This document shows positions 30,801 to 47,482 of a stretch of DNA of 64,000 nucleotides, piece by piece. Numbering within the stretch: position 1 is the first letter of the stretch; every line of letters starts with the position of its first letter. Both the position numbers and the translations under genes were made by a program. Below the pieces are notes generated by a model. The model saw nothing but the letters and a program-made list of their open reading frames with translations, had not been told where the DNA came from and did not search any database. The stretch covers positions 352,540 through 416,539 of IMG/VR virus record IMGVR_UViG_3300028840_002431. The stretch is one strand, 5' to 3'.

Positions 30801-31163
30801 TTCGAGGGCGAACTGCATCTGCATTCTACGACGACCGAGACTCGTCGAGTTGCTGGGCAAGAACCGGAACGCCTTGTCCATCATTTTCTTCTGGCTCCCG
30901 GTCGGCATCGCGTCTCCCAGGAACTCTTTGATGGTCCCCACGTGAGCGCGATCAGCCATCTTAACAAGCTGGACGCCTTTCCGGACCAAGTCGTCGTCAA
31001 CCTTGGAACCCGTCGCTTCTTCGAGGTAACGCGAGTAGGTGTCTAACGCGAGTATGAACACAACATACTCAGCGATTTCGAGTTCGCCTATCTCGTCTTC
31101 TTCATCGTCATCGGGAGGCATCGCACCCGAGCGTTGAAGAACTTGCTCTGGAGAAAGTGTCAT
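27864..31163 (-). CDS. UvrD/PcrA/Rep-family superfamily 1 DNA helicase with ~290 aa N-terminal extension
   Basis: All SF1 motifs are present: AGAGAGKST, TSFNKKAADEL, DFDDML, VDEAQD, GDDKQSIYGFRGA, TNYRC, ILTRTN, TVHSVKG, ERRLAYVALSRA. Confidence 0.95.
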   Translation of the reverse strand: MTLSPEQVLQRSGAMPPDDDEEDEIGELEIAEYVVFILALDTYSRYLEEATGSKVDDDLVRKGVQLVKMADRAHVGTIKEFLGDAMPTGSQKKMMDKAFRFLPSNSTSLGRRRMQMQFALERGGPATLRKIFKSNKAIREMKAAMAAADIEDADVALDKFAVIPLKNMRLRRWIDMAAEAAGSGSFQNAVAVGSEEADEDVAAIATARTNQQGTSPDSEEHNQAVSEKDDRLLDVQEKATEAAERAMVVSGEVDEPPAKSEVVGIATAAAVAVTTDPANPNNVPAPLRKLDDEQRMAALTDGRVLVAAGAGAGKSTTVVSRTEFLVKDRRVDPSRILVTSFNKKAADELEQKIGTAIGGDSVSQMSVGTMHKLFKKFIGEYGTGRERMAMGLAKGRSGFVKGGSPVARAVQRMWSDCYPADTPEERKVPRLKNVLLAKAKWAGNNITPAKAKEEARTPEEVDAADWYEMYEGLKGAIPGWTAPCKSKAYERFMGRWRPNDQRLGDFDDMLVIFDNILKREPAVRKTLQQAFDHVIVDEAQDLSGVQYSVISQMTEHVSDGKDGKSLWICGDDKQSIYGFRGARPDLFTSLSETEGWTTKMIRTNYRCQPEIVEAANALIAHNEKQIPMEAVPSPHKARGMASIEVRNPPDEATAALSVVEEIKSDITADGNVTDNAILTRTNKEQHAYETACIIRGVPYARKGTSSFLGSPETKAFLGYVDLVMGSDFGKMQKALAEVLNKPNRFFVAPEVCEQAVNDSLYGYAKRMELDVKTVNPIAAMEDDMFMRSLAGKLARSKSGFKFRKTIEKLEELRGEMGQMKARSEDPEYTTTDLFEDILGMRGTATVTDSVTGRTEYVEQTFRESLKADLRDAIGDDEDAAADAGDDEEGSETEGLGNVSFLFELIKKDPTDPEDMITDPGTPFGFKAKMDRYAAKADELRVDVKKWEDAQKNLPPEERKPPPGVYLGTVHSVKGAQWKNCYVAMPKGRFPIVPPAKPGEPPPDPAVQQEELESERRLAYVALSRAAENLNVICPNVVGGKAAGISPFVSEAGLAVGQNVPKPETEAEVEVGEEVIEEEPEVRTAAVEYEGVLPDDWEEE

Positions 31164-35029: not shown

Positions 35030-38000
35030 TTAGATCCGCGCCCTCAGATTGAACGTCAGGAGGATGTACAACAGCGGGAAGATCGGGCTGTAGAACATCT
35101 CAAACCTGAGAATCGTGGGATCGTCCTGGTCGATGGTAGCTGTCATGCCCGTGAAGGCTCCGACAATCTCAGCTTGCACGAGAGAGCGGAACAATCCGGT
35201 CATGGAGACCACGACCTCGTTGGTACGCGAAGCCAGGAACTTCGTGCCGATGAACGAGTCCAGGATAGCCCGGCTCTGTTGCTGGACGAAGTCAGCGATT
35301 TGGATGACTGTCGGAAGCCGTGTGAGCACCGAAGTCATGTTGGTGGTCAGGCCCTGACGAATCCGGATAATCGGGTCCAGATCTTCCAGGAGCGTAACAC
35401 CAGCAACCGCTGTCTGGTTCGCCTCGACAGGATCAAGGATACGCGGAATCCGCGTAAAGCCCTGAACCCGACGACGTGTGTAAGGAGTGGCTACATCGAC
35501 AGCCGGGGAAACGACAGCGCCAGCCACAGCGGCTGCGAAGAAGCTGCCATCGATCAGGCTCTCGAACGACTGCCCCAGTTCATCGGTCAAGGTGATAACC
35601 GATGAATCCGGGTAGTAGGCCACGATACGGCTGGAATTCAGCCCTCTGGCCACACTCTGAGCCGTCGTCGCGGAGGTGCCGGACGCGAATCCGATCATAC
35701 CCATCCGCTCTGCCTGATTCCGAGTGTTGCTCTGAATCTCGCAGTGTGAGGTCAGGTGCGTGTATACCGATGTGTCCGTGGACCCCGGAACGATGATATC
35801 CGGCCGGATGTTGCCCGGAAGCGGGGTCGCCAGTTCATCGATCGCCTCGTTGTACGACTGGGCGCTGGCTTGGTTCGTGTTCGGCTCCTTGAGGACCTGC
35901 TTCATGATGAGCAAGACGGCCCCGTTCAGGATCGACAAGTAACCAGACAGCGTCAGACGGTTCTCAGCCGACGTGCGGCCGAAGTTCGCCTCAATCGTCT
36001 TGAGTTGCTGGTAGATCTTGGGCGAGTAGTCCTGCTTCAAGTAGCGGTAGCTGATGAAGTAGAAGTCCCCAACGGCCGGTTCCACACCATCCGGGTTGTA
36101 CGTCACGAGAGACGCAGTGTCGTTCACGCCCACGCCAACGGTGTTTGTGACCAACAGTTCCAGACCACCGATGGAGTAGCGAGGAATCGACGGACTCACA
36201 TGGAAAGTCGTGGAGATCTCCAACGTGAAATACCCGGCTGGATCATAACTCCCGGTCGCGGACGGCAGAACCGTGAACCGAAGACCCGTACGAGCGTCTG
36301 TGTAGGTCTGGCCCGGATAACCGGTTCCAGCGGAACCCACAGCCGAAGTTGACGTTACGTCGTACTTATCGGACGGGTCCTCACCAACGTCTCCGTCGGT
36401 GCCCGGCGTGATGTTGATGCCTGTCGTCGGATTGAATGCCGAATTCGCGGAGTTCACGAATCCGATGCTCGAAGTAGCCGCACCCACCGTCAACGACTCG
36501 ATACGAATGTAGCTGTCGCCAGAGATTTCCTCGACGTAAGCCACAGCACCGGCCGCGAAACCAGCCGTGTCGTTGAGAATGTCCACGACCTCTTGAGCGC
36601 CAACCTGGGTCTGGGTGGCCGCGTCGTTCTGGGTGTACCCTAGTACATCGTTCGCAGAGCCACCGCCAATCAACAGGGAAGACCCGGTATCGTTGGTCGG
36701 GCTGGTCAGACGAATCTTGTCCAGGTTCACCCCGGTGCCCACCGACGCCAAGGCAGGGACCACGGCGTTGATGTCCGCGATAACTGTCGCGGGAAGAACG
36801 GCCGCACCCGCTGTCAGCGTGACGGTGTACTCCACGCCGTCCACAGTGACGACCAGTGTGTCGTTCAGACCGGTGGTGATGTTGAACGGGCCAGCAAGAG
36901 TGCCGAGATACGTGGCCGCCTTGCAGATGGCTCCGGTGGTCCCGTTGGCTTGCTGGAAGGTCGCGAAACCGAGAGTGGTCTCGGCCGTCCCCTGGTTGAT
37001 CGTGACATTCGCCACGTCGTCCAATCCAGCCGGTAGCGCACCCGGAACCTGACGACCCTCAATGATAAAGAAAACGTCGCCGGTAGCCGGTCCAACCTGC
37101 CGGAAGCTGGCCAGATTGTTCGGGGCTGTGGCAATGAAGTTCGGATCAGCGTCGATGGCCGCGTTGATCTCGCCTACGATGAAGGCCGGAAACTGGTTGC
37201 CAGCGGTCAAGCTGATCGTACCAATCGTGAACCCGTCGATCGTAAGATTCAGATCGTTATTAGGAGCCGGGGAGATGGCAATCTTACCAGCGTCCGGACC
37301 GGTCTGAATCGGAGTCACAGCGTCGCCCACCAGGAAAGCCTGGGCAGCCGCCGCCAGATTCGAGGACTGGTTCACGCCGTTGACCTGAGTGACCCAGGTG
37401 GCGGAGAACGGGGAGTAGAAGCTGTACGGAGCCGCTCCCTTGTTCGTGTAGCTCGCGTTGGAGCCAGGGGTCTGCCCGAAGGTCACTGTAACAACCTCGG
37501 ACACCGCCGTGCCGGAACCTGTGTGGAAGGCGTCCGGAATCAACTCCGAGCCACGCGGCCACTGGACGATCTGACTCAGACCGGACTTGGTTCCAAACCG
37601 GACCTCGTAGAGATTCTGATCGAGAATGGTCGAGAACACCGTGTACTCGCCCGTGCCGACCGGACCGGCAACCTGATTGGTCAGGATGAAGGTGTCATCC
37701 GACAACCGGCTGTAGTAGAAGGTCGCGTAGGCGTTATGGTCGGGCGGGACCGGGTCCTTGAGGACGATTCGCCGGTTCACACCATCCACGACAGTGACGG
37801 TCGCAGCCGGGCGGTTCAACGCATCTTGGAGGTTGATGCCCGTGTAAACCCTCACGAGATCCGGTCGGTTCGTCGTGAGCGCCTGACGGCTGTTAGCCAC
37901 CGAATTGAAGGTTTGAAGGCCCAGCGGAGTGCTACGCCCGTTACCCATGGTCGGAACCTCAGGCAACAGAAAGTCGGTGGACGATACTGTGGCCGGAATC

Positions 38001-39319
38001 GTTGTCGTGTCTGTGACCCGGTCACAGAGAGCCAGATAGTACTGACTGTCGATGAGGGTTCCGACGATTTGTCCGCCAGATCCGGTGTCACCATCGAACG
38101 GGGTCGCGCCCGGAGTGGTCGTTTCCGCCGTTACCTGGAAGCTTGCGCCCCAGTTGATGACGCTCACATCCGTGCTTGGGTTCGAGATAACGAAGTCCGT
38201 ACCCTGGATGTAGTCGTTACGACCCGGCGAGATCCCGCACCGCAGTACGGTGGTCACGAGGCTGTTGGGCAGGTAATCGAAGGTGTCCTGCCATGTGTTG
38301 GCCCAGTAGTCGATTGTGACAGTCGAGCCAGGAGCCGGGGCAAACGGCAGCGTGACGATACCGTTGGTGCCGTCAACCGCTTCGGCCACAACCTGTGTAC
38401 CGTCTACCTTGGCAACAACCTTGGACGGATCGGTTGTTGTGATTCCGCCGCTCGAACCATCCACGATTGGCCGGTTGAAGACCCGGAAATCGGCGTTACG
38501 GTTCGTGCTGTTACCTTCGGAGAAGCCCAAAGGACCGTTGGCGGTCCCGTTCCCAATCTCGATGCTGATTGAACTCGTGAACGAGATGTGGTCCCGGCCC
38601 TGACCGTCCGTGAAGACCGAAGTCGAAAGATTTGGAATCGCGGCAGCGTCAATGACCGATTTCAGGGTGGCGGCGCTGAGCGATCCGGCCGGGAACGTAA
38701 CCGTTGACTCCGTGCCGTTCACGTCGATGACAAAGATGTCGTTAACGCCGGTCGCAATGTCAAACGGAGCGTATCCCGGAGAAATCAGATTCGCGTTCTC
38801 AGTTGTGACCTGATCCGACACATCGTCGGTGAACGCTGTGTCTCCCCGGTGGAAGAAATAAGTGACGCGAACGTCGGCTTCCGGTTGGGTAGGCACCTGA
38901 AGGGTAACGAGGCCCTCTTGACCCCGCACAGACCCTAAAGATACGGGTACGCCGTTAACCGTGACAGTGACCGTTCTTGTGTCATTAGTCACCCGACCAA
39001 ATCCCTGGCCGTCTACAATCGGATAGTTCCTAACACGGAACGTCGTGAACGTACCGTCCTGAGCACCTAAGAGCAGGTTTTGAGGGTTCGTCGCATCAAC
39101 AACCCAGCTTTCTGACACGTCTTCGTTGACGATTTGCTGATCAACGGTTGCCGACGAGCCACGAACAAGCTCAAAATCGTTCTGCTCTAACTCTTCTTGA
39201 CCAACACCGATCAGGGCGGGGATTCTAAGTCCAGCCACCAAGTTCGAGGCATTGGTTTCAGTCAGGGTACGTGTGTAGACACCCGGAGGAGCATATGAAA
39301 TGAAGGGGCCAATCGCCAT
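35030..39319 (-). CDS. Contractile tail sheath protein with large inserted domains (1429 aa)
   Basis: N-terminal YAPPGVYTRT...IPALIGVG. C-terminal sheath core: AERMGMIG, SSRIVAYYP, GVTLLE, IRIRQGLTT, QIADFVQQQSRAILDSFIG, DPTILRFEMFYSPIFPLLYI. Confidence 0.9.
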   Translation of the reverse strand: MAIGPFISYAPPGVYTRTLTETNASNLVAGLRIPALIGVGQEELEQNDFELVRGSSATVDQQIVNEDVSESWVVDATNPQNLLLGAQDGTFTTFRVRNYPIVDGQGFGRVTNDTRTVTVTVNGVPVSLGSVRGQEGLVTLQVPTQPEADVRVTYFFHRGDTAFTDDVSDQVTTENANLISPGYAPFDIATGVNDIFVIDVNGTESTVTFPAGSLSAATLKSVIDAAAIPNLSTSVFTDGQGRDHISFTSSISIEIGNGTANGPLGFSEGNSTNRNADFRVFNRPIVDGSSGGITTTDPSKVVAKVDGTQVVAEAVDGTNGIVTLPFAPAPGSTVTIDYWANTWQDTFDYLPNSLVTTVLRCGISPGRNDYIQGTDFVISNPSTDVSVINWGASFQVTAETTTPGATPFDGDTGSGGQIVGTLIDSQYYLALCDRVTDTTTIPATVSSTDFLLPEVPTMGNGRSTPLGLQTFNSVANSRQALTTNRPDLVRVYTGINLQDALNRPAATVTVVDGVNRRIVLKDPVPPDHNAYATFYYSRLSDDTFILTNQVAGPVGTGEYTVFSTILDQNLYEVRFGTKSGLSQIVQWPRGSELIPDAFHTGSGTAVSEVVTVTFGQTPGSNASYTNKGAAPYSFYSPFSATWVTQVNGVNQSSNLAAAAQAFLVGDAVTPIQTGPDAGKIAISPAPNNDLNLTIDGFTIGTISLTAGNQFPAFIVGEINAAIDADPNFIATAPNNLASFRQVGPATGDVFFIIEGRQVPGALPAGLDDVANVTINQGTAETTLGFATFQQANGTTGAICKAATYLGTLAGPFNITTGLNDTLVVTVDGVEYTVTLTAGAAVLPATVIADINAVVPALASVGTGVNLDKIRLTSPTNDTGSSLLIGGGSANDVLGYTQNDAATQTQVGAQEVVDILNDTAGFAAGAVAYVEEISGDSYIRIESLTVGAATSSIGFVNSANSAFNPTTGINITPGTDGDVGEDPSDKYDVTSTSAVGSAGTGYPGQTYTDARTGLRFTVLPSATGSYDPAGYFTLEISTTFHVSPSIPRYSIGGLELLVTNTVGVGVNDTASLVTYNPDGVEPAVGDFYFISYRYLKQDYSPKIYQQLKTIEANFGRTSAENRLTLSGYLSILNGAVLLIMKQVLKEPNTNQASAQSYNEAIDELATPLPGNIRPDIIVPGSTDTSVYTHLTSHCEIQSNTRNQAERMGMIGFASGTSATTAQSVARGLNSSRIVAYYPDSSVITLTDELGQSFESLIDGSFFAAAVAGAVVSPAVDVATPYTRRRVQGFTRIPRILDPVEANQTAVAGVTLLEDLDPIIRIRQGLTTNMTSVLTRLPTVIQIADFVQQQSRAILDSFIGTKFLASRTNEVVVSMTGLFRSLVQAEIVGAFTGMTATIDQDDPTILRFEMFYSPIFPLLYILLTFNLRARI

Positions 39320-39323
39320 CAGA

Positions 39324-39488
39324 ATCTCCTTGAGGTTAGGTTATTTCTATCTGGGTCTGGGTGTCATCTTGGAAGTTTACCGTCGGAGGCGTTGGCTTCA
39401 CGGCGATAACGGTCTGATTCGATCCGGATCTAATCTTAGAGAAGCAACACACAACCTCTCGTACAGGCGGAGAAAATAAAACTTTATC
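39324..39488 (-). promoter_or_regulatory. Sheath leader containing shared intergenic motifs
   Basis: Five ATCT (AGAT on the mRNA strand); ATCTGGGT and TCTGATTCGAT shared with 25553-25702; AAAACTTTATC shared with 43157-43167. Confidence 0.4.
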
Positions 39489-39906
39489 GCTTCTCTTGCT
39501 CGCCGGTTAACTGAGATGCCTCTTTCTCCAGCTTCTTACGAGCCTCCTTTCCCTGATCGCTCATAGGTTCATAATCAACATAACCCTCCCCGGTGTGCCG
39601 GATAAGTGCGCGAGTTTCTCCCTGTTTTCTCGCTTCTTCTTTCACCTTGTCGCGCTCTTTGATGTAATCCCACCGCCTCTTAGCGCTACGCCCCACGGCC
39701 TTATCGGCCGTCGGGTAGTCTTGATCATGGACTCCAGAATTGGCCGCTGACGCGCCCCCTTCAGCGAACGAAAATCCGAATCCGGACATTACGAGCGGAG
39801 CTTGATCCTGACACTCCGGGCACTCGTGCGTCGGGTGGTCCCCCACCTTCAAGCTGCGCTCAAAACGAAGATTACACACTGGACACTCAAATACGTATTT
39901 GGGCAT
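39484..39906 (-). CDS. FmdB-family zinc-ribbon protein
   Basis: MPKYVFECPVC..RFE...ECPEC...LVMSGFGFSF pattern. Confidence 0.75.
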   Translation of the reverse strand: MPKYVFECPVCNLRFERSLKVGDHPTHECPECQDQAPLVMSGFGFSFAEGGASAANSGVHDQDYPTADKAVGRSAKRRWDYIKERDKVKEEARKQGETRALIRHTGEGYVDYEPMSDQGKEARKKLEKEASQLTGEQEKR

Positions 39907-39939
39907 TTTTTAATCCGATCTGTTATATATTTTGACAAC

Positions 39940-41133
39940 CTAGAGAATTCTCTCGAAATTATTGTTACGACCCGCGATGACGGGGATCGTGGAGAAAAAC
40001 AGATTGCTCTGAACGTCGCCGCTGATGGTGGACGTTTGAGGTTCGTTAGGAGAGGTAGCCCGGTCCGTTTCCGGAGTCGTCGGCGTCGCCTGACTGATTG
40101 TTAGAGGCAACGGGACATGGATCTCCCAGTCCGCCTGGACCTGGAGAGACAGCGAAGCGTTGTAGAAGTAATCGTCCCCCGTCTCGTCGTACACTTCTTC
40201 GGCTTCTCCCCCTATGGAAATGTCAGTGATTTCAATACCTTCGGTGGATAAAGTGTCCCTCTTCTGACCCCAGAGGTACATAACAATGAGATCGGCTATC
40301 TCCTCCATCTGGGTCGTATCCCTGGCTATGGCATCGAAATCAAACGACGCCTCGAACCTCCCTCCAAAAGCCCTTGCGGCCTCAACCCGATCTTCATACA
40401 CAACCACCGCTACCTTATCCCCCTTCTTGGCCCGTTTGCCGAAAGCGAGGACCACACCCGGTAGAGTTTGAAAATCACCAGTGTTCCACCGGAACTTAAC
40501 AGGTCCCACCGACGGAACCGCGTACCTGTAGTCGGCTGTTAGAACGGCCCCGGCCGGTGAACGAGCTATTAGCTCGATCGCCCCCGTGTCGTAATTCACG
40601 TTGTAGTGCTGTCCTTCTACCAACAGGAACTTGTGGTTTTCCCACAGGCGCAATGTTCCGACAACCGGGCGTTGTTGGAGTTGCGCCTCACTCTCAACAC
40701 CTGTTACAAACTTGAGAACCGGCTCGTCGTTGACTGTTAGAAGCGGATCGATCACGAACTCACCCTCTGTTTGAGGATCGTCCGGGGCACTCAGGATTTC
40801 GATGTAGTAAATCCCAGGAGGTGCTGGCATCACGCCGTCGTTCGCTTCTATACAACCAAGGTCCTCCTTGACCCATTCTAACGGGTACTTAGGAGCGCCC
40901 ACGTAAGCCAACATCACATGGCTCATTACCGACCCCATAAAGTTGTCGGCGGAGAGTTGAATCTTGTTAGCGCTGGACCCCTTTACAACAATCCCGAACT
41001 GTGGCCGTTCCTTGAAAGAGTATCGATTCTGAATGTACGGAACGACCTTCTCGTAGACCGGGTGTCGAGAAAAACTATCCTTTAGCTCCAGAACGAGCCG
41101 ACGCTTAAGCGCTTGTGTGAGATAATAATACAC
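39940..41133 (-). CDS. Tail terminator / tail completion protein (gp15-like) with inserted beta domain
   Basis: Located just upstream of the sheath. C-terminal FDFDAIARDTTQMEEIADLI...YNASLSLQVQADWE fits a terminator-type fold. Confidence 0.5.
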   Translation of the reverse strand: MYYYLTQALKRRLVLELKDSFSRHPVYEKVVPYIQNRYSFKERPQFGIVVKGSSANKIQLSADNFMGSVMSHVMLAYVGAPKYPLEWVKEDLGCIEANDGVMPAPPGIYYIEILSAPDDPQTEGEFVIDPLLTVNDEPVLKFVTGVESEAQLQQRPVVGTLRLWENHKFLLVEGQHYNVNYDTGAIELIARSPAGAVLTADYRYAVPSVGPVKFRWNTGDFQTLPGVVLAFGKRAKKGDKVAVVVYEDRVEAARAFGGRFEASFDFDAIARDTTQMEEIADLIVMYLWGQKRDTLSTEGIEITDISIGGEAEEVYDETGDDYFYNASLSLQVQADWEIHVPLPLTISQATPTTPETDRATSPNEPQTSTISGDVQSNLFFSTIPVIAGRNNNFERIL

Positions 41134-41134
41134 A

Positions 41135-42220
41135 TCACCCGTCTGCGTGCTCTTCCATAGCGAGGACCAAAAGCCCTTCCGCTACGGCTGTCATTGGATC
41201 TCTGGCGGTACGGATCTCGCTGATCTCTATCGGGAACCCGCGCCTCTTGACGGCCTCGAACTCCTCGGTGAAGACCTTCATAAACCCGTTCGCCTTACTC
41301 GTTCCCCCAGACACCACGAATGGGACAGGGTCGGGTAGATCAATAGCTGCCTGAACCTTCTTGAATTGGACCGCGATATTGTCCAAGCAATACTTGATCA
41401 AAGCCCGGATATACAGGGCGATGGCTTCTTCTTCCCGGTTTGTGGGATTTGACAGATCTACACCCTTCTCCTTGATGGCGCACATCCTGGATGCTGTGGA
41501 GCCGATGGCCTTGGCCGCGTGAGCATCGACCCAGTCCCCACATCTCGCCAGGGCGAAGTCCAACCCTTTCACCGTCTGGTAAGACAGGGCTATATTCATC
41601 ATACCGCTGCCGAAAGACGCGGCGAGACCGGAGAAATTCTCGTTCATGCACTGCGAGTAAATAATAGCCATCGCCTCATTCATGGGATGAGGTGTGTACC
41701 CCAACTCCGTGAGGATCTTCCGGAACACCTCCGTGTGGTAGATGATATCCTGGCCGACATCGTCCACAGGCTCAGCCGGAACACTGTAGAAGCAATGCTC
41801 GTTAGGCGAGACCGGCTTGCCGAGCACGTTCTCAATCAACAGGCTCAAAATCTGTTGCGCTTCTAACTCAGCGGACGAAATGATGCCGTGAGACAGCGGG
41901 CGGCGCACCTCCCGCTTGAACAGATTCGCCATGTTGAGAGCCGGGTCCCCTAACACGACAAGGGTGTCTCCTTGCTCGACGTAGTCAACTTGGGACAGGC
42001 GTAAGGTTTTCTTGGTCTCGATGTCCAGATCAATGAACACGTCCCGAATGCGCTTGGTCTCTATTTGATTACCGCCCGTCTGACGAGCCGACACCAAGTT
42101 CATGGTTCCCAAGTCCAGGCCACACCCAGGCGCGGACGCAGTCGCTGGAGCCGGGGCAGCGGGTTTGGCCGGTGGTTGCTGCGGGGGTGGTTGCGGTTGT
42201 TGAGGTTGGTCTTGCGCCAT
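41135..42220 (-). CDS. Actin-fold ATPase (MreB/FtsA/ParM superfamily)
   Basis: Phosphate-1 GLDLGTMN, connect-1 PMNEAMA, phosphate-2-like SFGSGMMNIA, adenosine VVSGGTS, connect-2 DPMTAVAEG. Confidence 0.85.
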   Translation of the reverse strand: MAQDQPQQPQPPPQQPPAKPAAPAPATASAPGCGLDLGTMNLVSARQTGGNQIETKRIRDVFIDLDIETKKTLRLSQVDYVEQGDTLVVLGDPALNMANLFKREVRRPLSHGIISSAELEAQQILSLLIENVLGKPVSPNEHCFYSVPAEPVDDVGQDIIYHTEVFRKILTELGYTPHPMNEAMAIIYSQCMNENFSGLAASFGSGMMNIALSYQTVKGLDFALARCGDWVDAHAAKAIGSTASRMCAIKEKGVDLSNPTNREEEAIALYIRALIKYCLDNIAVQFKKVQAAIDLPDPVPFVVSGGTSKANGFMKVFTEEFEAVKRRGFPIEISEIRTARDPMTAVAEGLLVLAMEEHADG

Positions 42221-42261
42221 CTGATCTTCTCCAATCTGATCTTAGCTCGCCCGAAGGCGAG
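42221..42261 (-). promoter_or_regulatory. C(UUCG)G tetraloop hairpin plus tandem AAGATCAGAT repeats in the actin-gene leader
   Basis: mRNA strand: CTCGCC-TTCG-GGCGAG (42246-42261), then AAGATCAGAT twice, the second overlapping the ATG. Confidence 0.55.
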
Positions 42262-42267
42262 AACTGC

Positions 42268-42801
42268 CTATCGACGGTAAGTGTAAGCAACTCGCCCACC
42301 TGCTCGTTGCTGAAGCAGGTATAAGAACTCCTCATGTTTATCAGCTACACCTTGAATCAGGTTATCTAACCCGTTTGTGAGCGTTCCCTTGGCGTCAAGG
42401 CTCTCCCTGGCAGCGTTGAGACACCCAACAACACACTTTTCCGTCGCCAAACTCACGGCCACCATCTCGTCGGCACTCGGCCGATCTTCGGGCGACCACG
42501 CATTGACGAAGACACTCATCACCTCCATCTGAGTAACTGGACACACCAAATCCGGGTGTCCTAAGCCCATGGCCTTCTCAGCCATCTGGTCGATGAAAAG
42601 CTGAGAATCCTCGTACAGACGCTCGAAAAGTATATGGTCCCCGTAATACGAGGGACCAGCCGTCCGCCAATGGTGGCTCTGGTGCATCGCATTGGCCGCC
42701 CTTAGAATCGCTGTAAGCGCTCCCAACTCCGCCATCGGAAGTCCGGCGAAGCTTTGACACGCCTGAGCGAAATAAGGACTGGCCTCATTCGCTACACGCA
42801 T
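42268..42801 (-). CDS. Dps/ferritin-like protein
   Basis: HHW..GPSYYGDHILFERLYE....IDQMAEK matches the Dps ferroxidase-centre pattern; C-terminal DKHEEFLYLL. Confidence 0.75.
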   Translation of the reverse strand: MRVANEASPYFAQACQSFAGLPMAELGALTAILRAANAMHQSHHWRTAGPSYYGDHILFERLYEDSQLFIDQMAEKAMGLGHPDLVCPVTQMEVMSVFVNAWSPEDRPSADEMVAVSLATEKCVVGCLNAARESLDAKGTLTNGLDNLIQGVADKHEEFLYLLQQRAGGRVAYTYRR

Positions 42802-42807
42802 GATGGC

Positions 42808-43092
42808 CTACTTCCAGTTCTTTTCGCCAGCTTCTTTGCCGCCTTCGCCGCCTTCGTCACCGCCCTTGAGATCCTGGACCATGGCCGAAAACTGAGTCCG
42901 AACCGGAGCGCCCTTAAGAGACTTTCCAGTCCACGGGGACTTGCACGGCATTACCTTCTCATCAAGGTAGAACGTTTTCGAGCCGTCAGTGTACTTCCAC
43001 ATGACGGGAGCCGCCGCCGTCTTTGTCTCAACAGCGGTGCGCTCCGCAATCTCGTTGGCCTGACTCAGTACGCTTGCTTGTCTCGGATGCAT
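42808..43092 (-). CDS. Small hypothetical protein with RQAS/KTAA motifs
   Basis: 94 aa; fills the gap between neighbours. Confidence 0.65.
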   Translation of the reverse strand: MHPRQASVLSQANEIAERTAVETKTAAAPVMWKYTDGSKTFYLDEKVMPCKSPWTGKSLKGAPVRTQFSAMVQDLKGGDEGGEGGKEAGEKNWK

Positions 43093-43165
43093 GAGAATAT
43101 TCCCTTTGTGTTAAAAACCACGGTTTTCAAAACCACTCCACTTGTGCTTCAACAAGAAAACTTTA

Positions 43166-43762
43166 TCAATGACCCTTCTTTCTCAGTTTTCTGAGGGCGT
43201 TTGCCGCGCTAACAGCGTCAGAAGTGGCGGATTCACCCTTCACGTCGATTCTAACGTTAGCGTCCTCAGGGTGTATCTGATCGGGTAGGTACATGGGGGC
43301 CGACCCGTCTACTGTCTCTTCTTCCGTAACCGGGGCAGCGGCGGTTGCCACTTGGCCCGGCATTACAACCACAGGGCGTTCCTGTAACGCAGCTAGAATT
43401 TCGTCTAATTTACGGGCGGTTTGGGTGTCATCCTTATCCCGTAATTCTTTGTTCTCGGCTTCTAACGCCCTGACTCTGGAAGATAGCTCCTGGACCTGGG
43501 TTTCTAACTGGCTCGTGTTACTGGCGGCTTGTTGAGTCGAGGTCGGCGCGGGTGGCGCTGCCGATGGAAGCTGAAAAAGGTGATGTTGGCTGATCCCCCG
43601 CCACAGATCCTTGGACTGGACCGCCAACTCTCCCGGAATAGTCACTGTCACCCCATGAGGCACTTCCCGGCGAATGTCCTCTATCTTGTGAGACGGGGAG
43701 ACCATCCCAATGACCTTGACATCCCCTCTCCGACTCGCTCGAAAAATATGCCCCTTCATCAT
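43166..43762 (-). CDS. Hypothetical protein with central coiled coil
   Basis: 198 aa; LETQVQELSSRVRALEAENKELR heptads. Confidence 0.7.
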   Translation of the reverse strand: MMKGHIFRASRRGDVKVIGMVSPSHKIEDIRREVPHGVTVTIPGELAVQSKDLWRGISQHHLFQLPSAAPPAPTSTQQAASNTSQLETQVQELSSRVRALEAENKELRDKDDTQTARKLDEILAALQERPVVVMPGQVATAAAPVTEEETVDGSAPMYLPDQIHPEDANVRIDVKGESATSDAVSAANALRKLRKKGH

Positions 43763-44263
43763 TTACCTCGTCCAAGCTTCGCGTATTTTCTTCCGCGCTC
43801 CATCTCTAAATTTCTTCTTGAGAAAGGCCCGTGATTCCTCTTTCGCTTTATCCACAAAACCCGACGGCGGCCTACCGGGATGAACCCACCTTCCGTCAGC
43901 CATCGACTTGGCCGTCGCGCTCCGGAATACCAATTCCCCAGTTTCGGTCACGATGGGTATCGGTTTACGGGCCTTGGTTAACCATTTCATCTGCTCCGAC
44001 TTCTGGCCCTTCACGAGCGGTGCAAATGCCGGGTGAGTCGCCGTGATTTGGAGGCTCGACGGCTTTATCTCAATCTTGATGGACTGGCTTATCGCTCTCT
44101 TGGCCCGATCTGAAAAACCCGTCTGCATCAACTCCCTCTTGACGCGCCGAAGAAGATCCGTCTTCGACCTCTTGAGGATGGTGTTCAGGTCCCCGGTGTT
44201 CGGTAGTTCACCGGGGAGTAAGGGTTTCATGTAAACCCGCGACGCTATGAAGGGCTTAGGCAT
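43763..44263 (-). CDS. Neck/tail-completion protein (HK97 gp10-like)
   Basis: Basic 166 aa protein with a VHPG..PSGFVDKA motif; follows the head-closure gene. Confidence 0.45.
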   Translation of the reverse strand: MPKPFIASRVYMKPLLPGELPNTGDLNTILKRSKTDLLRRVKRELMQTGFSDRAKRAISQSIKIEIKPSSLQITATHPAFAPLVKGQKSEQMKWLTKARKPIPIVTETGELVFRSATAKSMADGRWVHPGRPPSGFVDKAKEESRAFLKKKFRDGARKKIREAWTR

Positions 44264-45622
44264 CTACCACTCTATGTTTTCCCACACCTTGGTGCGTCCT
44301 CTTAGCTCACGCTCGTCCGGGATGTTGGGTTTCTCGGTTGGCTTTGCTTCCGCCTCAAGCTCCGGGCCGTGAGGCTTGAACTGGACTGCGTCGTATTTGA
44401 CCGGGTCGCCCACCGGGACCTGATACCGGATGTCCTTCTCGTCCAGGTGGCCGATGTTGAAGTGTTGTTGGAGAACCATTCCCCGGTTACTCGGGAACCT
44501 GACCGGGCCTATCGAGTACCGGACACCATTGATCTTCACCAGAAAGTCCCGTTGGGAAAGGATAGGCATCGGGCCTGTCCACACCTCATAAACGTGCTCC
44601 ACGGTCCTTCCCGTATCCCTCTGGGCTTTCCGCCTCTCGGCATCGTCCGGGGCTATCATGGCCTCGTACGGACCTTCATAGCCGCCCAAAACGCCAGTCC
44701 CGTAACACTTCCGACAGTCATTCAAAGGCTGTCCGTAATGCTCTGCCTGGAAGCACGAGCAAGGGACTCCCACCTCCTTACGGATGAACAGCTTCACCCG
44801 CTCACCGCCTTGAGACAATATCCACCGATTACGCCGGACAGCTTCCCGCCAGATATAGTCCAGCTTCTCGATTTCCATCGAGTTGGTGGCCACTGCGTTC
44901 TCAATCGGCGTCTCAACCATCTGCTCGCACTGGACCTGAGTCAGGTCACATTTCAGCGGCACTCCGACGGTCGTGAGCCGGTAAAAGACCCGCTGGTCAA
45001 GATCGGTCTTGAGTAAGGATCGGTTGCGCCGGTACGTGACCGTCACCCGGCTATCGGGACCAGGGACCAACGAAGGGTCTAGCTTCTGAGTCTCGACATC
45101 CGCGTAGATGAACGGGTCGATTTCGACCTCTCCGGAGAACCCATCCACCCGCAATGGCTGGACTGTCTGGCCGTCGATCTTTACCCAAACGTCGTCTGGC
45201 AAATTAGCCGTGACGGCCTGGGACCCCTCCTTGACGATCGGGCAGAGAAGTGTCTTGAAAATCCACCGGGGAGCCTTGGTCCCGGCCCCACACTCGCCCC
45301 TTATAATCCACCGGTCTTCTGTAACCTCCTCGTCGATCACGAGTTCGTTGTCTGTCCGGTCTCGCCAGAAGGAGGCACAGGCCAAGGTGTCAGAAATACG
45401 GAAGAAGGGACCATACTCCGAATCGAAGGAGCGGTAGATGTTAACACCAAGGATTTTGAACTGGCTGTTCAACGCCAGAATCGCCGGATTGTCCCACGTA
45501 AGATCGTATATCCCCGGCTCGAAACCACTGGTCAAGAAGACGTTGAGCGGCGGTAACGGCCACGGAGTCTTTGTATACTCCAGGGTCGTTATGTTCCGAT
45601 CCCGGTTAGTGATATAGGCCAT
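44264..45622 (-). CDS. Head-closure/neck protein (gp14-like) with Zn-finger
   Basis: GERVKLFIRK...CSC...CRKCYGTG...RDFLVKINGVRYSIGPV...QQHFNI pattern; located in the neck region. Confidence 0.55.
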   Translation of the reverse strand: MAYITNRDRNITTLEYTKTPWPLPPLNVFLTSGFEPGIYDLTWDNPAILALNSQFKILGVNIYRSFDSEYGPFFRISDTLACASFWRDRTDNELVIDEEVTEDRWIIRGECGAGTKAPRWIFKTLLCPIVKEGSQAVTANLPDDVWVKIDGQTVQPLRVDGFSGEVEIDPFIYADVETQKLDPSLVPGPDSRVTVTYRRNRSLLKTDLDQRVFYRLTTVGVPLKCDLTQVQCEQMVETPIENAVATNSMEIEKLDYIWREAVRRNRWILSQGGERVKLFIRKEVGVPCSCFQAEHYGQPLNDCRKCYGTGVLGGYEGPYEAMIAPDDAERRKAQRDTGRTVEHVYEVWTGPMPILSQRDFLVKINGVRYSIGPVRFPSNRGMVLQQHFNIGHLDEKDIRYQVPVGDPVKYDAVQFKPHGPELEAEAKPTEKPNIPDERELRGRTKVWENIEW

Positions 45623-45668
45623 GTGGCAAACCTCTACACTAGAGCTTTACCACAAGAAAAAGCGCGGC

Positions 45669-46001
45669 CTACGACGGCGGCTCTCCCGGTGGTGGTCCCT
45701 CTAGGACGCTCAACAAACCAGTCTTCGGGTCTATCTCCGCCTGAACATCAGGTGACAAACCTCTGTCCGTGATCACCTTCTCGAACACCCGTGATTTCTG
45801 CACGTTAACCTGATGGGACGCCGACAATATCTGGACCCGGCTTTCTTCAAGCGCCAAGAATTGGAGGGCTAAATCAATACGGGCCTCGTCCAACTCGTTG
45901 AGGCGCTGGATAACCTCCGGAGGAACGGGGTCGTTCAGGGTTAGTTTCTTGGGCTTTTCCGGCTGTTTTCCGGGCTTTTTGCCAGCGTCTTTTTTGGGCA
46001 T
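45669..46001 (-). CDS. Hypothetical protein
   Basis: 110 aa with Lys/Pro N-terminus and a helical core. Confidence 0.65.
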   Translation of the reverse strand: MPKKDAGKKPGKQPEKPKKLTLNDPVPPEVIQRLNELDEARIDLALQFLALEESRVQILSASHQVNVQKSRVFEKVITDRGLSPDVQAEIDPKTGLLSVLEGPPPGEPPS

Positions 46002-46018
46002 GTGGGTACCTACACCAA

Positions 46019-47482
46019 TCAGGTAACAGCCTTCACGAATTCAGACAGGGCCTTACGGTACTTACCAGGGGCGCTGCGTTTGAGAGCCTTGAAGAACTCG
46101 TGGGGTTTCAGCATGTCTATCGCTCTGTAGCCACCCAAAGCGTCCGCTTTCTCCTGCCAGTCCCGGTCACGGTAGTCTGGAAACGGAATCGTGCCGGTAA
46201 ACAATTTGACGGCCGACCGAAGCTCCAACGGCGCTGGTAATGCTTCGCCGTCCCTTTTTCGTTCCTTAAGTTGATCCCGATGTTCCTTCTGGGCTTGCTT
46301 CCAGTGCCACTCGAACGAATCAATCGAGTCCGCGAGCCTAGTGTAAAACTCGATGTCGTCCAGGGCGTGAAAGTCCAACTGCCTAACTGAGAGGCCCTGG
46401 TCCTTTAGCCGTTGGCGTAACTTGATAACCTCCGGGTCATCCTTTCTGTACGAAGGGTGTCCGGGGTCGTACTGTTGTCGAAACTCTGGGGTCTGAATCT
46501 TACGAGAAGGGAAACCAGGGCGACGACCCCGCATTTCCGGCAGCATCAATGTACTCCGGTCCACAGCATAGGCCATATAACTCTGAGCAAAATGCTGTAG
46601 CTCGTGCCGCAACGACTTGCCAAGACCCTCTAACCCTTCCCATCGGAGGGTGTCGGGGATAATAATCGTCAGAAGCCTCTGAGGATCGTACCAAAAAGCC
46701 TTGACCCCTTTTGTCGCCTTGGTTGTCAGCTTTACCTTTATCCCCTGCCAACCGAGCTTCGTCCTCTCGATGGACTTCTTGAGGTCTTCTAACAACTGCT
46801 TACGCATCTCCGCGACCTCAGGCTTGGCCGACTCGTCTTTTTCTCCCAGGAACTTAACGGTCCCCTTCAACTCTTCTACGTGCTCGTCTATTTGCTTCTG
46901 GAGTTTCTTTTCCAGATCCTTCGTATCGTATCGCCAGCCCTTGAGATTGATGGGAAACTCCCTCACGGCCTCGTCGCCTTTGAGTGTAACGCCGGGCTGA
47001 ATCCTCTTCTTGATACTGGCTATTTCACGTTGAATGTCGGCTATGTCCTGTCTCTTACTCTCGTAGTGACCGTCCACACGACCCTTGTAGTACTCATACC
47101 TATTGTCGGCTCGCTCTTGAAGATCCTTTTGCTTCTCAGGGGTCATCTTCTGAAACAACCGGATGCTGTCACGTTCCCCAGGATGCCCAAAGACCCACGA
47201 AACGTCGTAGAACGCTTTGTAGTTCTTCCACGTCGGGTTGGTCTTGTACTCTTTGGCGACATCCAAAAGCTGTGACAGCCTCTTATCGTAGTCCGTTTTT
47301 TCCTTCCGACCCTTCAACAAGGACTGTGCTTTCTTAAGTTCATGGTCGGAAACGACGGCTACAACCCAGTCGTAAATCTCTTCGTACATGGCGGGCGGCG
47401 CTTCGAATATCCCGGCGACTCGTAAGGCCGCTTCCCTACGACGGTCGTAGCTGTAGAACGTCGTACGATCGTAGGTGTACAT
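46019..47482 (-). CDS. Hypothetical protein with HExxH zinc-metallopeptidase-like motif
   Basis: LRHELQHFAQSY plus a downstream DDIEF; N-terminal REAALRVAG tag. Confidence 0.55.
   Translation of the reverse strand: MYTYDRTTFYSYDRRREAALRVAGIFEAPPAMYEEIYDWVVAVVSDHELKKAQSLLKGRKEKTDYDKRLSQLLDVAKEYKTNPTWKNYKAFYDVSWVFGHPGERDSIRLFQKMTPEKQKDLQERADNRYEYYKGRVDGHYESKRQDIADIQREIASIKKRIQPGVTLKGDEAVREFPINLKGWRYDTKDLEKKLQKQIDEHVEELKGTVKFLGEKDESAKPEVAEMRKQLLEDLKKSIERTKLGWQGIKVKLTTKATKGVKAFWYDPQRLLTIIIPDTLRWEGLEGLGKSLRHELQHFAQSYMAYAVDRSTLMLPEMRGRRPGFPSRKIQTPEFRQQYDPGHPSYRKDDPEVIKLRQRLKDQGLSVRQLDFHALDDIEFYTRLADSIDSFEWHWKQAQKEHRDQLKERKRDGEALPAPLELRSAVKLFTGTIPFPDYRDRDWQEKADALGGYRAIDMLKPHEFFKALKRSAPGKYRKALSEFVKAVT

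What the first reader, a model, noticed from the sequence alone, without database searches (positions are those of the whole stretch)
41135..42261. Actin-fold ATPase embedded in the neck/tail operon
Seen: all five actin-superfamily motif regions are present, plus a Q/P/A-rich N-terminal arm. The phosphate-2 Asp appears replaced (SFGSGMM instead of DxGGGT). The stop is 1 nt from the tail-terminator start, and the leader has a UUCG hairpin and tandem AAGATCAGAT. Established: phage cytoskeletal proteins include PhuZ and TubZ tubulins and the actin-like AlpC of corynebacterial prophage CGP3, all linked to DNA or capsid positioning. Inference: late co-expression with neck and tail genes suggests a filament or ATPase scaffold for virion assembly or transport, or interference with host MreB/FtsA, and not plasmid-type partitioning.
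Basis: partly seen in the sequence, partly recalled or inferred. Interest (0 to 1): 0.7.

Follow-up and report, generated by a model that had tools for sequence, protein, structure and literature searches.

The report
Volactin-type actin gene of huge phages
A 416-kb uncultivated phage encodes an actin relative of the 'volactin' family, present in all 69 informative relatives sampled and wedged between neck and tail genes, so these giant viruses probably build their own actin-like filament, though its job is untested.

Summary
ORF 41135-42220 (-) encodes a 361-aa protein that matches Pfam Volactin over its full length (242 bits). It folds confidently (pLDDT 95) and superposes on Haloferax volcanii volactin (TM 0.85/0.89, 38% identity). 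MreB, MamK, FtsA and actin are far more distant (13-18%).

The window is the end of a 416.5-kb virus record. I found relatives through the neighbouring terminator gene, independently of the actin gene. All 69 informative loci carry the actin gene, and it is more conserved than the sheath.

The order neck-like, coiled-coil protein, actin, terminator-like, Zn-ribbon, sheath-like persists down to 44% actin identity.

The phosphate-2 Asp-to-Ser change is real, but it is a subfamily signature (Ser in 88 of 90), not decay. H. volcanii volactin keeps Asp. Inteins sit at five or more sites in and beside this loop in relatives.

The record has no tubulin, ParB or iteron array.

Best reading: a nucleotide-dependent filament, probably slow-hydrolysing, coupled by the coiled-coil protein to virion parts or phage DNA. 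Polymerisation, nucleotide use, timing and cargo are all inferred. I found no paper linking volactin to phages.

The parts
41135..42220 (-). Volactin-family actin homologue, 361 aa (stop codon at 41135-41137)
   Evidence: Pfam PF25216 at 242 bits, E 1e-71, full length. AF2 pLDDT 95.3. Superposes on H. volcanii volactin D4GU28 with TM 0.85/0.89, rmsd 1.7, 38% identity.
42128..42220 (-). Q/P/A-rich N-terminal arm (residues 1-31), lineage-specific
   Evidence: No secondary structure in the model. Homologues align only from about residue 31. Only L003 has a similar arm.
42104..42121 (-). Phosphate-1 motif GLDLGT (residues 34-39)
   Evidence: D36 in 86/90, G38 in 88/90, T39 in 86/90.
41672..41680 (-). 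Connect-1 N-E-A (residues 181-183), holding the conserved Glu
   Evidence: E182 in 88/90. It aligns with the MamK S-E-P segment.
41594..41617 (-). Variant phosphate-2 loop SFGSGMMN (residues 202-209)
   Evidence: S202 in 88/90, G206 in 90/90, N209 in 89/90. MamK has D..T.D at these positions. H. volcanii volactin has DFGAGT (PMC10869688 Suppl. Fig. 8b). Inteins are inserted at five or more sites here and just after in relatives.
41297..41311 (-). Adenosine motif SGGTS (residues 304-308)
   Evidence: G305 in 90/90, G306 in 88/90.
41174..41188 (-). Connect-2 AVAEG (residues 345-349)
   Evidence: G349 invariant.
42221..42267 (-). 47-nt leader. It holds the UUCG hairpin (42246-42261), two AAGATCAGAT copies (42234-42243 and 42219-42228) and GGAG (42229-42232).
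   Evidence: The features are real, but the fold is not above shuffles and is not conserved. It was not listed as terminator-like.
43166..43762 (-). Coiled-coil protein, 198 aa, candidate adaptor. It has conserved C-terminal motifs: M-[FY]-[IL]-P, then A-L-[KR]-x-x-R-K-K.
   Evidence: In relatives that lack the Dps-like gene, its homologue lies directly upstream of the actin gene (gap -20 to +142 nt; at most 54 nt in all but L036). P160 and L190 are invariant and K195 is in at least 90% of 14 sequences that are only 15-59% identical overall. Otherwise only coiled-coil noise in Pfam and nothing in PDB.
42268..42801 (-). Ferritin/Dps-like protein, 177 aa. It is a clade-specific insertion between the coiled-coil gene and the actin gene.
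   Evidence: Pfam Ferritin at 27 bits and phrog_3636 at E 1e-9. Present in 68/69 close relatives but absent from deeper ones.
42808..43092 (-). Small ORF, 94 aa, unknown function, variably present
   Evidence: No family hit. Detected in only some relatives.
39940..41133 (-). Neck/tail-terminator (gateway)-like protein, 397 aa, starting 1 nt after the actin stop
   Evidence: Atlas leads SP10_terminator, Phage_tail_terminator_9 and E217_gp29. The AF2 model has pLDDT 72. Foldseek matches 8qkh_G (phage 812 neck) at E 2e-8, plus 8fvh_M, 9b42_G and tail-completion proteins.
39484..39906 (-). Zn-ribbon protein, 140 aa, conserved between the terminator-like and sheath-like genes
   Evidence: Pfam Zn_ribbon_8 at E 1.6e-7, just under the cutoff. 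Syntenic in relatives.
35030..39319 (-). Probable tail sheath, 1429 aa
   Evidence: Weak support only: Phage_sheath_1C in 2/9 and Phage_sheath_1 in 1/9 orthologue C-termini. The N- and C-termini look sheath-like by eye. Syntenic everywhere.
44264..45622 (-). Neck / head-completion-like protein, 452 aa
   Evidence: Atlas structure leads T4_neck-protein, Phage_HCP and Phage_H_T_join_2. These are leads only. Syntenic.
43763..44263 (-). Basic 166-aa protein of unknown function, conserved member of the block
   Evidence: No family hit. Syntenic.

Best explanation
The gene encodes a phage-borne actin homologue of the volactin family. It belongs to a distinct subfamily whose phosphate-2 loop reads S-x-G-x-G-M-x-N. 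It is a core gene of a large clade of uncultivated huge myophages (about 230-530 kb) found in sediment and water.

Most likely mechanism, step by step:
1. The monomer binds ATP. The phosphate-1 Asp, the connect-1 Glu and the adenosine Gly-Gly are all kept.
2. It polymerises into actin-like filaments in the infected bacterium.
3. Because the phosphate-2 Asp, Thr and acidic residue are replaced by Ser, Met and Asn, hydrolysis is probably slow or partner-stimulated. That would give a long-lived track or scaffold.
4. The coiled-coil protein encoded just upstream, with its conserved C-terminal peptide motifs, acts as the adaptor.
5. The cargo is most probably virion assembly intermediates (neck, tail or capsid). 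Phage DNA is the second choice.

Shown here: fold, family membership, motif conservation, core-gene status and deep synteny.

Inferred: nucleotide binding, polymerisation, slow hydrolysis, the adaptor role, the cargo and late expression.

My rough probabilities:
- Actin-fold volactin-family protein: 0.97.
- Forms filaments: about 0.65.
- Cargo is virion parts: about 0.35.
For: Family and fold:
- Pfam Volactin at 242 bits against a cutoff of 35.
- AF2 pLDDT 95.
- Best fold match is H. volcanii volactin at TM 0.85/0.89 and 38% identity. All other actins are at 13-18%.
- The family profile hits only filament-forming actins in PDB: MamK 7e-15, BeeR 4e-10, MreB 4e-7, FtsA 2e-6. There is no Hsp70 hit at E <= 0.01.
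- Volactin itself forms dynamic filaments in vivo (PMC10869688).

Constraint on the nucleotide site:
- D36, E182, S202, G204, G206, N209, G305 and G306 are each conserved in at least 86 of 90 sequences.
- Inteins sit at five or more sites in and beside the phosphate-2 loop.

Core gene:
- All 69 of 69 loci found through the terminator gene carry it.
- Its median identity to the window protein is 65.7%, above sheath (61.6%), terminator (60.8%) and neck (59.4%).

Deep synteny:
- The neck, coiled-coil, actin, terminator, Zn-ribbon, sheath order persists down to 44-50% actin identity.

Packing and composition:
- Gaps in the block are 0-73 nt on one strand.
- GC3 is 0.69, like sheath and neck.

Adaptor candidate:
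- C-terminal motifs are conserved in an otherwise divergent neighbour.

Other context:
- No tubulin in the 416.5-kb record.
- Cellular relatives sit in cargo-linked settings: a gas-vesicle cluster, and ParB-HTH or HU fusions.
Against: - Polymerisation is not shown. The homotrimer prediction gave no answer.
- The phosphate-2 Asp and Thr, which the characterised volactin keeps, are absent. Extrapolating from H. volcanii is therefore weaker.
- No expression data exist. No RNA run was listed.
- Gene position in a co-directional 130-kb stretch is weak evidence for a functional link.
- A UvrD helicase and a Dps-like gene also sit among the structural genes.
- A second huge-phage lineage (LR756511, 29% identity) carries the gene in a different context.
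- The terminator, neck and sheath calls rest on moderate or weak structural and HMM evidence.
Confidence: 0.5

Rival explanations
1. A non-polymerising actin-fold ATPase acts as an assembly factor or chaperone for the neck-tail junction. From my own knowledge, the closterovirus Hsp70 homologue is needed for virion tail assembly and would be the analogue. On this reading the protein binds and releases neck, terminator or sheath subunits instead of forming a track.
For: - Adjacent to the terminator-like gene in most relatives: the gap is at most 40 nt in 43 of 69, with a median of 16 nt.
- Deep synteny with neck and sheath genes.
- The altered catalytic loop could mark a change of function.
- The trimer prediction gave no interface (this counts neither way).
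Against: - The family profile finds only filament-forming actins in PDB and no Hsp70.
- The protein is a bare 361-aa actin core with no substrate-binding domain.
- The nearest characterised relative polymerises in vivo.
- In 26 of 69 relatives other DNA, up to 1.5 kb, separates it from the terminator gene.
Confidence: 0.15
2. A DNA-positioning filament, in the manner of ParM or AlpC. It would move or anchor the replicating or packaging-ready phage genome, or a plasmid-like prophage, through a DNA-binding adaptor.
For: - Cellular relatives at 39-43% identity carry N-terminal ParB-HTH domains. A whole Atlas cluster carries HU fusions.
- A Dps-like 'DNA binding protein' PHROG lies directly upstream in this subclade.
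- AlpC of prophage CGP3 is a precedent (PMC4446434; abstract).
Against: - No ParB_N in the record.
- No direct-repeat family in the block has more than two copies, and the AAGATCAGAT decamer itself occurs only twice there, so there is no iteron array.
- The two decamers are not conserved.
- The Dps-like gene is missing from deeper relatives that keep the actin gene in the same place.
- The conserved neighbours are virion genes, not replication genes.
Confidence: 0.15
3. A host-directed cytoskeletal mimic. It would co-assemble with or displace a host actin (host volactin or MreB) to change cell size or shape, or to block division, making room for very large virions.
For: - Volactin controls cell shape in H. 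volcanii.
- Volactin-family proteins occur in bacteria of several phyla.
- The host has peptidoglycan, since the record encodes an SLT domain.
Against: - The closest non-syntenic relatives are at most about 45% identical. The syntenic phage group branches deeply, though support is weak.
- A mimic would be expected to track its host protein. Instead this gene is conserved across 350 or more viral stretches in a fixed virion-gene context.
- Identity to MreB is 15-16%.
Confidence: 0.08

Closest known systems
Volactin (VolA, HVO_2015, UniProt D4GU28) of Haloferax volcanii; Pfam PF25216
   Same: Same Pfam family (242 bits). Same fold at TM 0.85/0.89 and 38% identity. The phosphate-1 and adenosine motif regions are present in both. 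Volactin forms dynamic filaments in vivo.
   Different: - It is a cellular archaeal protein involved in the rod-to-disk transition, not a phage gene.
- H. volcanii volactin has D-F-G-A-G-T in phosphate 2. The phage protein and 88 of 90 relatives have S-x-G-x-G-M-x-N.
- The genomic context is entirely different.
MamK (magnetosome actin; PDB 5jyg, 5ljv)
   Same: It is the best solved-structure relative, by profile (E 7e-15) and by Foldseek. It is an actin that positions a large intracellular cargo through an adaptor.
   Different: Only 18% identical. It has the canonical D-I-G-A-G-T-T-D loop. It is cellular, with a membrane organelle as cargo.
AlpC/AlpA of Corynebacterium glutamicum prophage CGP3
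   Same: A phage-encoded actin-like filament with an adjacent adaptor gene, which makes it the functional precedent (PMC4446434; abstract).
   Different: - It is a different actin family. The volactin HMM did not ring in the C. glutamicum control genome. That holds only if the control genome carries CGP3.
- It belongs to a temperate prophage and is linked to viral DNA replication, not to neck or tail genes.
PhuZ/TubZ tubulins of nucleus-forming jumbo phages
   Same: Phage-made cytoskeleton in very large phages, used to position the replication compartment and deliver capsids (reviews PMC7950403 and PMC8314001). It is a possible functional analogue. This record has no tubulin.
   Different: Unrelated fold (tubulin/FtsZ GTPase). 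It belongs to a different phage clade and is not placed among neck and tail genes.
ParMRC / Alp7ARC plasmid partition systems
   Same: An actin-like ATPase with an adjacent small adaptor that binds the filament through a C-terminal peptide (my own knowledge of ParR-ParM). The coiled-coil neighbour here has conserved C-terminal motifs.
   Different: No ParM match at E <= 0.01 with the family profile. No iteron centromere. No ParB_N. The neighbours are virion genes.

Membership tests
Volactin family (Pfam PF25216) | Full-length match to the family HMM above the gathering score | tested here: met
   242.4 bits against a cutoff of 35, residues 34-354 on profile positions 4-321. Confirmed in the genome search.
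Volactin family (Pfam PF25216) | Structural superposition on the founding member D4GU28 | tested here: met
   Foldseek E 7.6e-38, TM 0.85/0.89, rmsd 1.7 A over 332 residues, 38% identity. The next hits are at 13-18% identity. Both structures are predictions.
Volactin family (Pfam PF25216) | Phosphate-2 motif as published for H. volcanii volactin (hhhDxG..., with Asp and Thr) | tested here: not met
   H. volcanii volactin has GVDFGAGT. The window protein has AASFGSGMMN. Ser is in 88/90 and Asn209 in 89/90 relatives. It is therefore a distinct subfamily within the Pfam family.
Volactin family (Pfam PF25216) | Forms dynamic filaments in vivo | not testable with these tools
   This has been shown only for H. 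volcanii. The homotrimer prediction gave no answer.
Cytomotive actins (MreB/MamK/ParM/actin superfamily) | Five motif regions: phosphate 1, connect 1, phosphate 2, adenosine, connect 2 | tested here: met
   All five are present and conserved. Phosphate 2 is in a variant form.
Cytomotive actins (MreB/MamK/ParM/actin superfamily) | Self-assembly into protofilaments | tested here: inconclusive
   Complex prediction with 3 copies scored 0.00, and the tool states this is no evidence either way.
MreB (Pfam PF06723) | Match to the MreB_Mbl HMM above cutoff, and close similarity to MreB | tested here: not met
   No PF06723 hit for the window protein at E <= 0.01. Identity to MreB structures and models is 15-16%.
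ParMRC-type partition locus | Iteron centromere and a DNA-binding adaptor beside the actin gene | tested here: not met
   No direct-repeat family in 39300-46100 has more than two copies, and AAGATCAGAT itself occurs only twice there. No ParB_N in the record. No ParM hit by profile.
Hsp70-type chaperone | Hsp70 nucleotide-binding-domain similarity plus a substrate-binding domain | tested here: not met
   No Hsp70 Pfam hit. No Hsp70 chain at E <= 0.01 with the family profile. The protein is 361 aa with a single actin core.
Phage cytoskeletal proteins (functional class: PhuZ, TubZ, AlpC) | Encoded by a phage, and forms filaments that position DNA, compartments or capsids | tested here: inconclusive
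   Phage-encoded: yes. It lies in a 416.5-kb virus record and is a core gene in 69/69 relatives. Filaments and cargo were not tested.

The most novel reading that the evidence does not exclude
These huge phages run an actin-based virion assembly line. Long-lived volactin filaments, coupled through the conserved C-terminal peptide of the upstream coiled-coil protein to neck or terminator complexes, would gather or transport very large heads and tails so that they can be joined in a crowded cell. That would be the first actin-driven morphogenesis system in a bacterial virus. It would also be a mechanistic counterpart, on a different polymer, of the PhuZ spindle.
Probability: 0.25. Interest if true: 0.85.

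Novelty: new variant of a known kind. Interest (0 to 1): 0.7.

Why it matters
Phage-built cytoskeletons are so far known from tubulins (PhuZ, TubZ) and from one prophage actin (AlpC). Here an actin homologue is a universal gene of a widespread clade of 230-530-kb phages with no cultivated member, and it is more conserved than the tail sheath. No cultivated phage in the 50,697-record collection carries it.

It gives concrete entry points into how the largest phages organise infection:
- A protein that can be expressed and tested for polymerisation.
- A natural active-site variant, Ser-Met-Asn in place of Asp-Thr-Asp/Glu, that may tune filament lifetime.
- A candidate adaptor.
- A defined set of possible cargos.

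It also shows that the volactin family, described in 2024 from one haloarchaeon, is a broad family spanning bacteria and phages. Its contexts point to cargo positioning: gas-vesicle clusters and DNA-binding fusions.

Tried and rejected
- PHROGs gave no hit for the actin, terminator or neck genes.
- phmmer of the single protein against PDB found nothing. Only the 90-sequence profile reached MamK, BeeR, MreB and FtsA.
- Complex prediction, spent on a homotrimer of residues 31-361, returned 'no answer'. The more informative actin plus coiled-coil pair could then not be run.
- The search for related loci on genome contigs with the 90-sequence alignment failed for lack of a conserved stretch. The single scan, with the acidic representative P0195, found only a Planctomycetia-labelled MAG contig and no haloarchaeon. 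I therefore took the H. volcanii motif from the paper's supplement.
- Relatives cannot be drawn for a virus record.
- No RNA run was listed. Only DNA runs from sediment and seawater hold the sequence, so expression timing is untested.
- Leader hairpin as a conserved element: rejected. z is -0.35 to -0.39, and hairpins in relatives are inconsistent.
- Decamers as a parC-like centromere: rejected.
- Dps-like protein as the conserved DNA adaptor: rejected, because it is absent from deeper syntenic relatives.
- N-terminal extensions of long relatives were compared with the phage proteome. The only matches were to the actin itself, which means tandem duplication.
- The tree of 90 sequences is star-like, with 43 of 87 inner branches open. 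It supports the window's own clade (100) but not a firm phage-versus-cell split. Several context look-ups landed on contigs too short to classify.
- Profile and Pfam searches of the coiled-coil protein returned only coiled-coil noise.
- Rfam and tRNA scans of the window were empty.
Full report
**1. The observation**

The ORF at 41135-42220 on the minus strand encodes 361 residues. All five actin-superfamily motif regions are present:
- Phosphate 1: GLDLGT, residues 34-39.
- Connect 1: N-E-A, residues 181-183.
- Phosphate 2: SFGSGMMN, residues 202-209.
- Adenosine: SGGTS, residues 304-308.
- Connect 2: AVAEG, residues 345-349.

In a profile alignment to MamK, S202, M207 and N209 stand opposite the Asp, Thr and Asp of the canonical loop.

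Residues 1-31 are Q/P/A-rich and unstructured in the model. They are not conserved. Homologues align only from about residue 31, and they carry short, different N-termini.

The stop codon (41135-41137) is followed after one base by the GTG of the next gene.

The 47-nt leader (42221-42267) contains three features:
- A six-pair stem with a UUCG loop at 42246-42261.
- Two exact AAGATCAGAT copies. The window holds 3 matches against 0.04 expected.
- A GGAG Shine-Dalgarno sequence.

These leader features exist, but they carry little weight. The fold is no better than shuffles (z -0.39, -0.35). The hairpin was not listed as terminator-like. Upstream regions of 18 relatives show no consistent hairpin or decamer.

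**2. What the protein is**

- Pfam gives a full-length match to Volactin, PF25216 (242 bits against a cutoff of 35). PHROGs gives nothing.
- An AlphaFold2 model built on 90 diverse homologues is confident (pLDDT 95.3, pTM 0.89).
- Against Swiss-Prot models the top hit is H. volcanii volactin (E 8e-38, TM 0.85/0.89, rmsd 1.7 A, 38% identity). Salactin, MreB, Mbl, FtsA, MamK and eukaryotic actins all follow at 13-18% identity and TM about 0.6.
- Against solved structures the best matches are MamK, MreB and BeeR.
- The family profile finds MamK (7e-15), BeeR (4e-10), MreB (4e-7) and FtsA (2e-6). It finds no Hsp70 at E <= 0.01.

The protein is thus a member of the volactin family. It is not nested in MreB or FtsA. 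Its nearest structural kin are all filament formers.

**3. The altered catalytic loop**

Across 90 relatives, Ser202 occurs in 88, Gly206 in 90 and Asn209 in 89. The phosphate-1 Asp (86), the connect-1 Glu (88) and the adenosine Gly-Gly (90 and 88) are also kept.

The characterised H. volcanii protein has D-F-G-A-G-T at this loop (Suppl. Fig. 8b of PMC10869688). The phage protein therefore belongs to a separate 'Ser-type' subfamily that is under strong constraint. It is not a decaying copy.

Inteins give independent support. Many relatives carry inteins with LAGLIDADG or HNH endonuclease domains. They are inserted at five or more different positions:
- after Ser202,
- after Gly204,
- after Met207,
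- after Asn209,
- before the G-D-W motif.

From my own knowledge, inteins home to conserved functional sites.

Also from my own knowledge, mutating this Asp in MreB or ParM blocks hydrolysis but not assembly, and stabilises filaments. I therefore infer ATP binding with slow or partner-stimulated hydrolysis. This is an inference, not a result.

**4. Where the gene sits**

The window is the last 64 kb of a 416.5-kb IMG/VR virus record that is estimated 87% complete. The sequence occurs in sediment and seawater DNA runs. A lytic transglycosylase domain in the record points to a peptidoglycan-bearing bacterial host.

The neighbours, from downstream to upstream of the actin gene:
- Downstream 397-aa protein: neck/tail-terminator ('gateway')-like. 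Evidence is language-model and structure leads, and a moderate-quality model (pLDDT 72) matching the phage 812 neck chain (E 2e-8), E217 and Pa193 gateway proteins and tail-completion proteins.
- 1429-aa protein: a probable sheath, on weak HMM evidence.
- 452-aa protein upstream: neck or head-completion leads.

Gaps within the block are 0-73 nt on one strand. GC, GC3 and codon usage of the actin gene resemble those of the sheath and neck genes. Co-transcription and late timing are only inferred, because no RNA run was listed.

**5. Distribution and conservation**

- The protein has more than 1000 metagenomic homologues. The top 120 are at 68-87% identity, on contigs up to 530 kb.
- At 50% clustering there are 1039 clusters at E <= 1e-3.
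- In the 50,697-record phage collection only two uncultured huge phages match (485 and 595 kb). No cultivated phage carries the gene.
- Thirty-five IMG/VR loci found through the actin gene show the same gene order.
- To remove ascertainment bias I searched with the terminator family instead. That found 350 viral stretches. Of the best 80, 69 have at least 1.5 kb of upstream sequence, and all 69 carry the actin gene.
- Median identity to the window proteins in those 69 loci is 65.7% for the actin, 61.6% for the sheath, 60.8% for the terminator, 59.4% for the neck protein and 42% for the Dps-like protein.
- Relatives whose actin is only 44-50% identical still keep the neck, actin, terminator, Zn-ribbon, sheath order.
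- A more distant huge phage (29% identity) has the gene in another context, next to PKD-domain proteins.

The record has no tubulin and no ParB_N. The block has no iteron array.

**6. A candidate partner**

In deeper relatives that lack the Dps-like gene, the ORF immediately upstream of the actin gene is a 190-220-aa protein. The two genes often overlap.

This ORF aligns with the window's coiled-coil protein (43166-43762). The 14 sequences are only 15-59% identical overall. They share the same architecture and two C-terminal linear motifs: M-[FY]-[IL]-P (Pro invariant), and A-L-[KR]-x-x-R-K-K (Leu invariant, Lys in at least 90%).

In the window's subclade, the 94-aa ORF and the Dps-like gene were inserted between the coiled-coil gene and the actin gene. 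A conserved terminal peptide on an otherwise fast-evolving neighbour is what an adaptor for an actin-like filament looks like. ParR-ParM is the example, from my own knowledge.

**7. The family elsewhere**

Volactin-family genes also occur in cells in cargo-suggestive settings:
- Inside a gas-vesicle gene cluster.
- As ParB-HTH fusions next to a second plain copy.
- As HU fusions in an Atlas cluster.
- Fused to a Wzz/BY-kinase module.
- As tandem duplications.

The 90-sequence tree is poorly resolved. It separates the window's clade with full support and places it in a 34-row group. Every member of that group that I could check has the phage synteny.

**8. Interpretation**

The best-supported reading is a phage-made, nucleotide-dependent actin-like filament. 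It would be coupled by the coiled-coil protein to a large cargo. Virion intermediates are the first candidate, because of the deep and universal linkage to neck and tail genes. Phage DNA is the second candidate, because of the DNA-binding fusions in cellular relatives.

Three rivals remain open: a non-polymerising assembly ATPase, a ParM-like DNA system, and a host-cytoskeleton mimic. Each has specific counter-evidence, listed under the rival explanations.

**9. Novelty**

No paper in the searchable library links volactin to phages. Searches on huge or jumbo phages with actin-like or MreB terms returned only tubulin work and AlpC. The founding huge-phage survey mentions tubulin but not actin.

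Phage cytoskeletal proteins and the volactin family are both known. The new elements are a universal, highly conserved Ser-type volactin in a large uncultivated huge-phage clade, fixed between neck and tail genes, with a candidate adaptor. I rate this a new variant of a known kind, with interest 0.7.

Noticed in passing
L033:7977-10058 (also L034; proteins P0121-P0123, P0126, P0130, P0133, P0135, P0150, P0162, P0166, P0169, P0171, P0217, P0228, P0232, P0239): Many phage volactin genes are interrupted by inteins carrying LAGLIDADG or HNH endonuclease domains. The inteins sit at five or more distinct sites clustered in and just after the phosphate-2 loop.
   Followed up: partly
L039:6001-7044 (NCBI GCA_049642725.1, contig JBARPC010000005.1): A volactin-family gene (P0188, 38% identical) lies inside a gas-vesicle gene cluster, flanked by GvpH-, GvpL/F-, GvpG-, GvpO- and GvpK/GvpA-family genes and AAA ATPase genes (AAA_5, CDC48-type). 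It may be a MamK-like organelle-positioning actin for gas vesicles.
   Followed up: no
L037:4860-5870 and L037:6001-8676: On a 247-kb cellular contig, a plain 336-aa volactin gene is followed by an 891-aa ParB-HTH-volactin fusion (P0156). Seven 50%-cluster representatives share this N-terminal domain. An ESM Atlas cluster (69 members, Acidobacteriota) fuses HU to volactin.
   Followed up: partly
proteins P0125, P0142, P0144; P0158: Some relatives are tandem duplications: a degenerate N-terminal actin domain plus a C-terminal volactin domain. One relative (P0158, 1160 aa) is fused to Wzz/GNVR and a ParA/MinD-type tyrosine-kinase-like module.
   Followed up: no
window 43166-43762 and the homologues aligned in A4: The coiled-coil protein upstream of the actin gene evolves fast (15-59% identity) but keeps two C-terminal linear motifs, M-F-I-P and A-L-K-x-x-R-K-K. 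This looks like a docking peptide.
   Followed up: partly
window 17325-19157 (-), SLT match at about 18564-18713: A 610-aa ORF contains a lytic transglycosylase (SLT) domain (31 bits, above cutoff). This is consistent with a tail-associated cell-wall hydrolase and a peptidoglycan-bearing bacterial host.
   Followed up: no
window 27864-31163 (-): A 1099-aa UvrD/REP-type helicase (phrog_1967, E 2e-77) sits only about 4 kb downstream of the probable sheath gene. The 'structural' region is therefore interspersed with DNA-metabolism genes.
   Followed up: no
window 5182-11106, 13846-17328, 19857-23171 (all -): Very large ORFs of 1974, 1160 and 1104 aa. The 1104-aa ORF had no informative Pfam or PHROG match. 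The other two were not searched. They may be baseplate, fibre or tape-measure proteins.
   Followed up: no
window 35030-45622: GC3 is highest in the probable sheath (0.71), the neck-like gene (0.72) and the actin gene (0.69), against 0.57-0.67 for the smaller neighbours. This may be a sign of high expression.
   Followed up: no
L043 (LR756511.1, 539798-558790): A 595-kb uncultured phage carries a 29%-identical volactin gene in a different neighbourhood. Three PKD-domain proteins lie upstream, and none of the window's neck or tail neighbours is present.
   Followed up: partly
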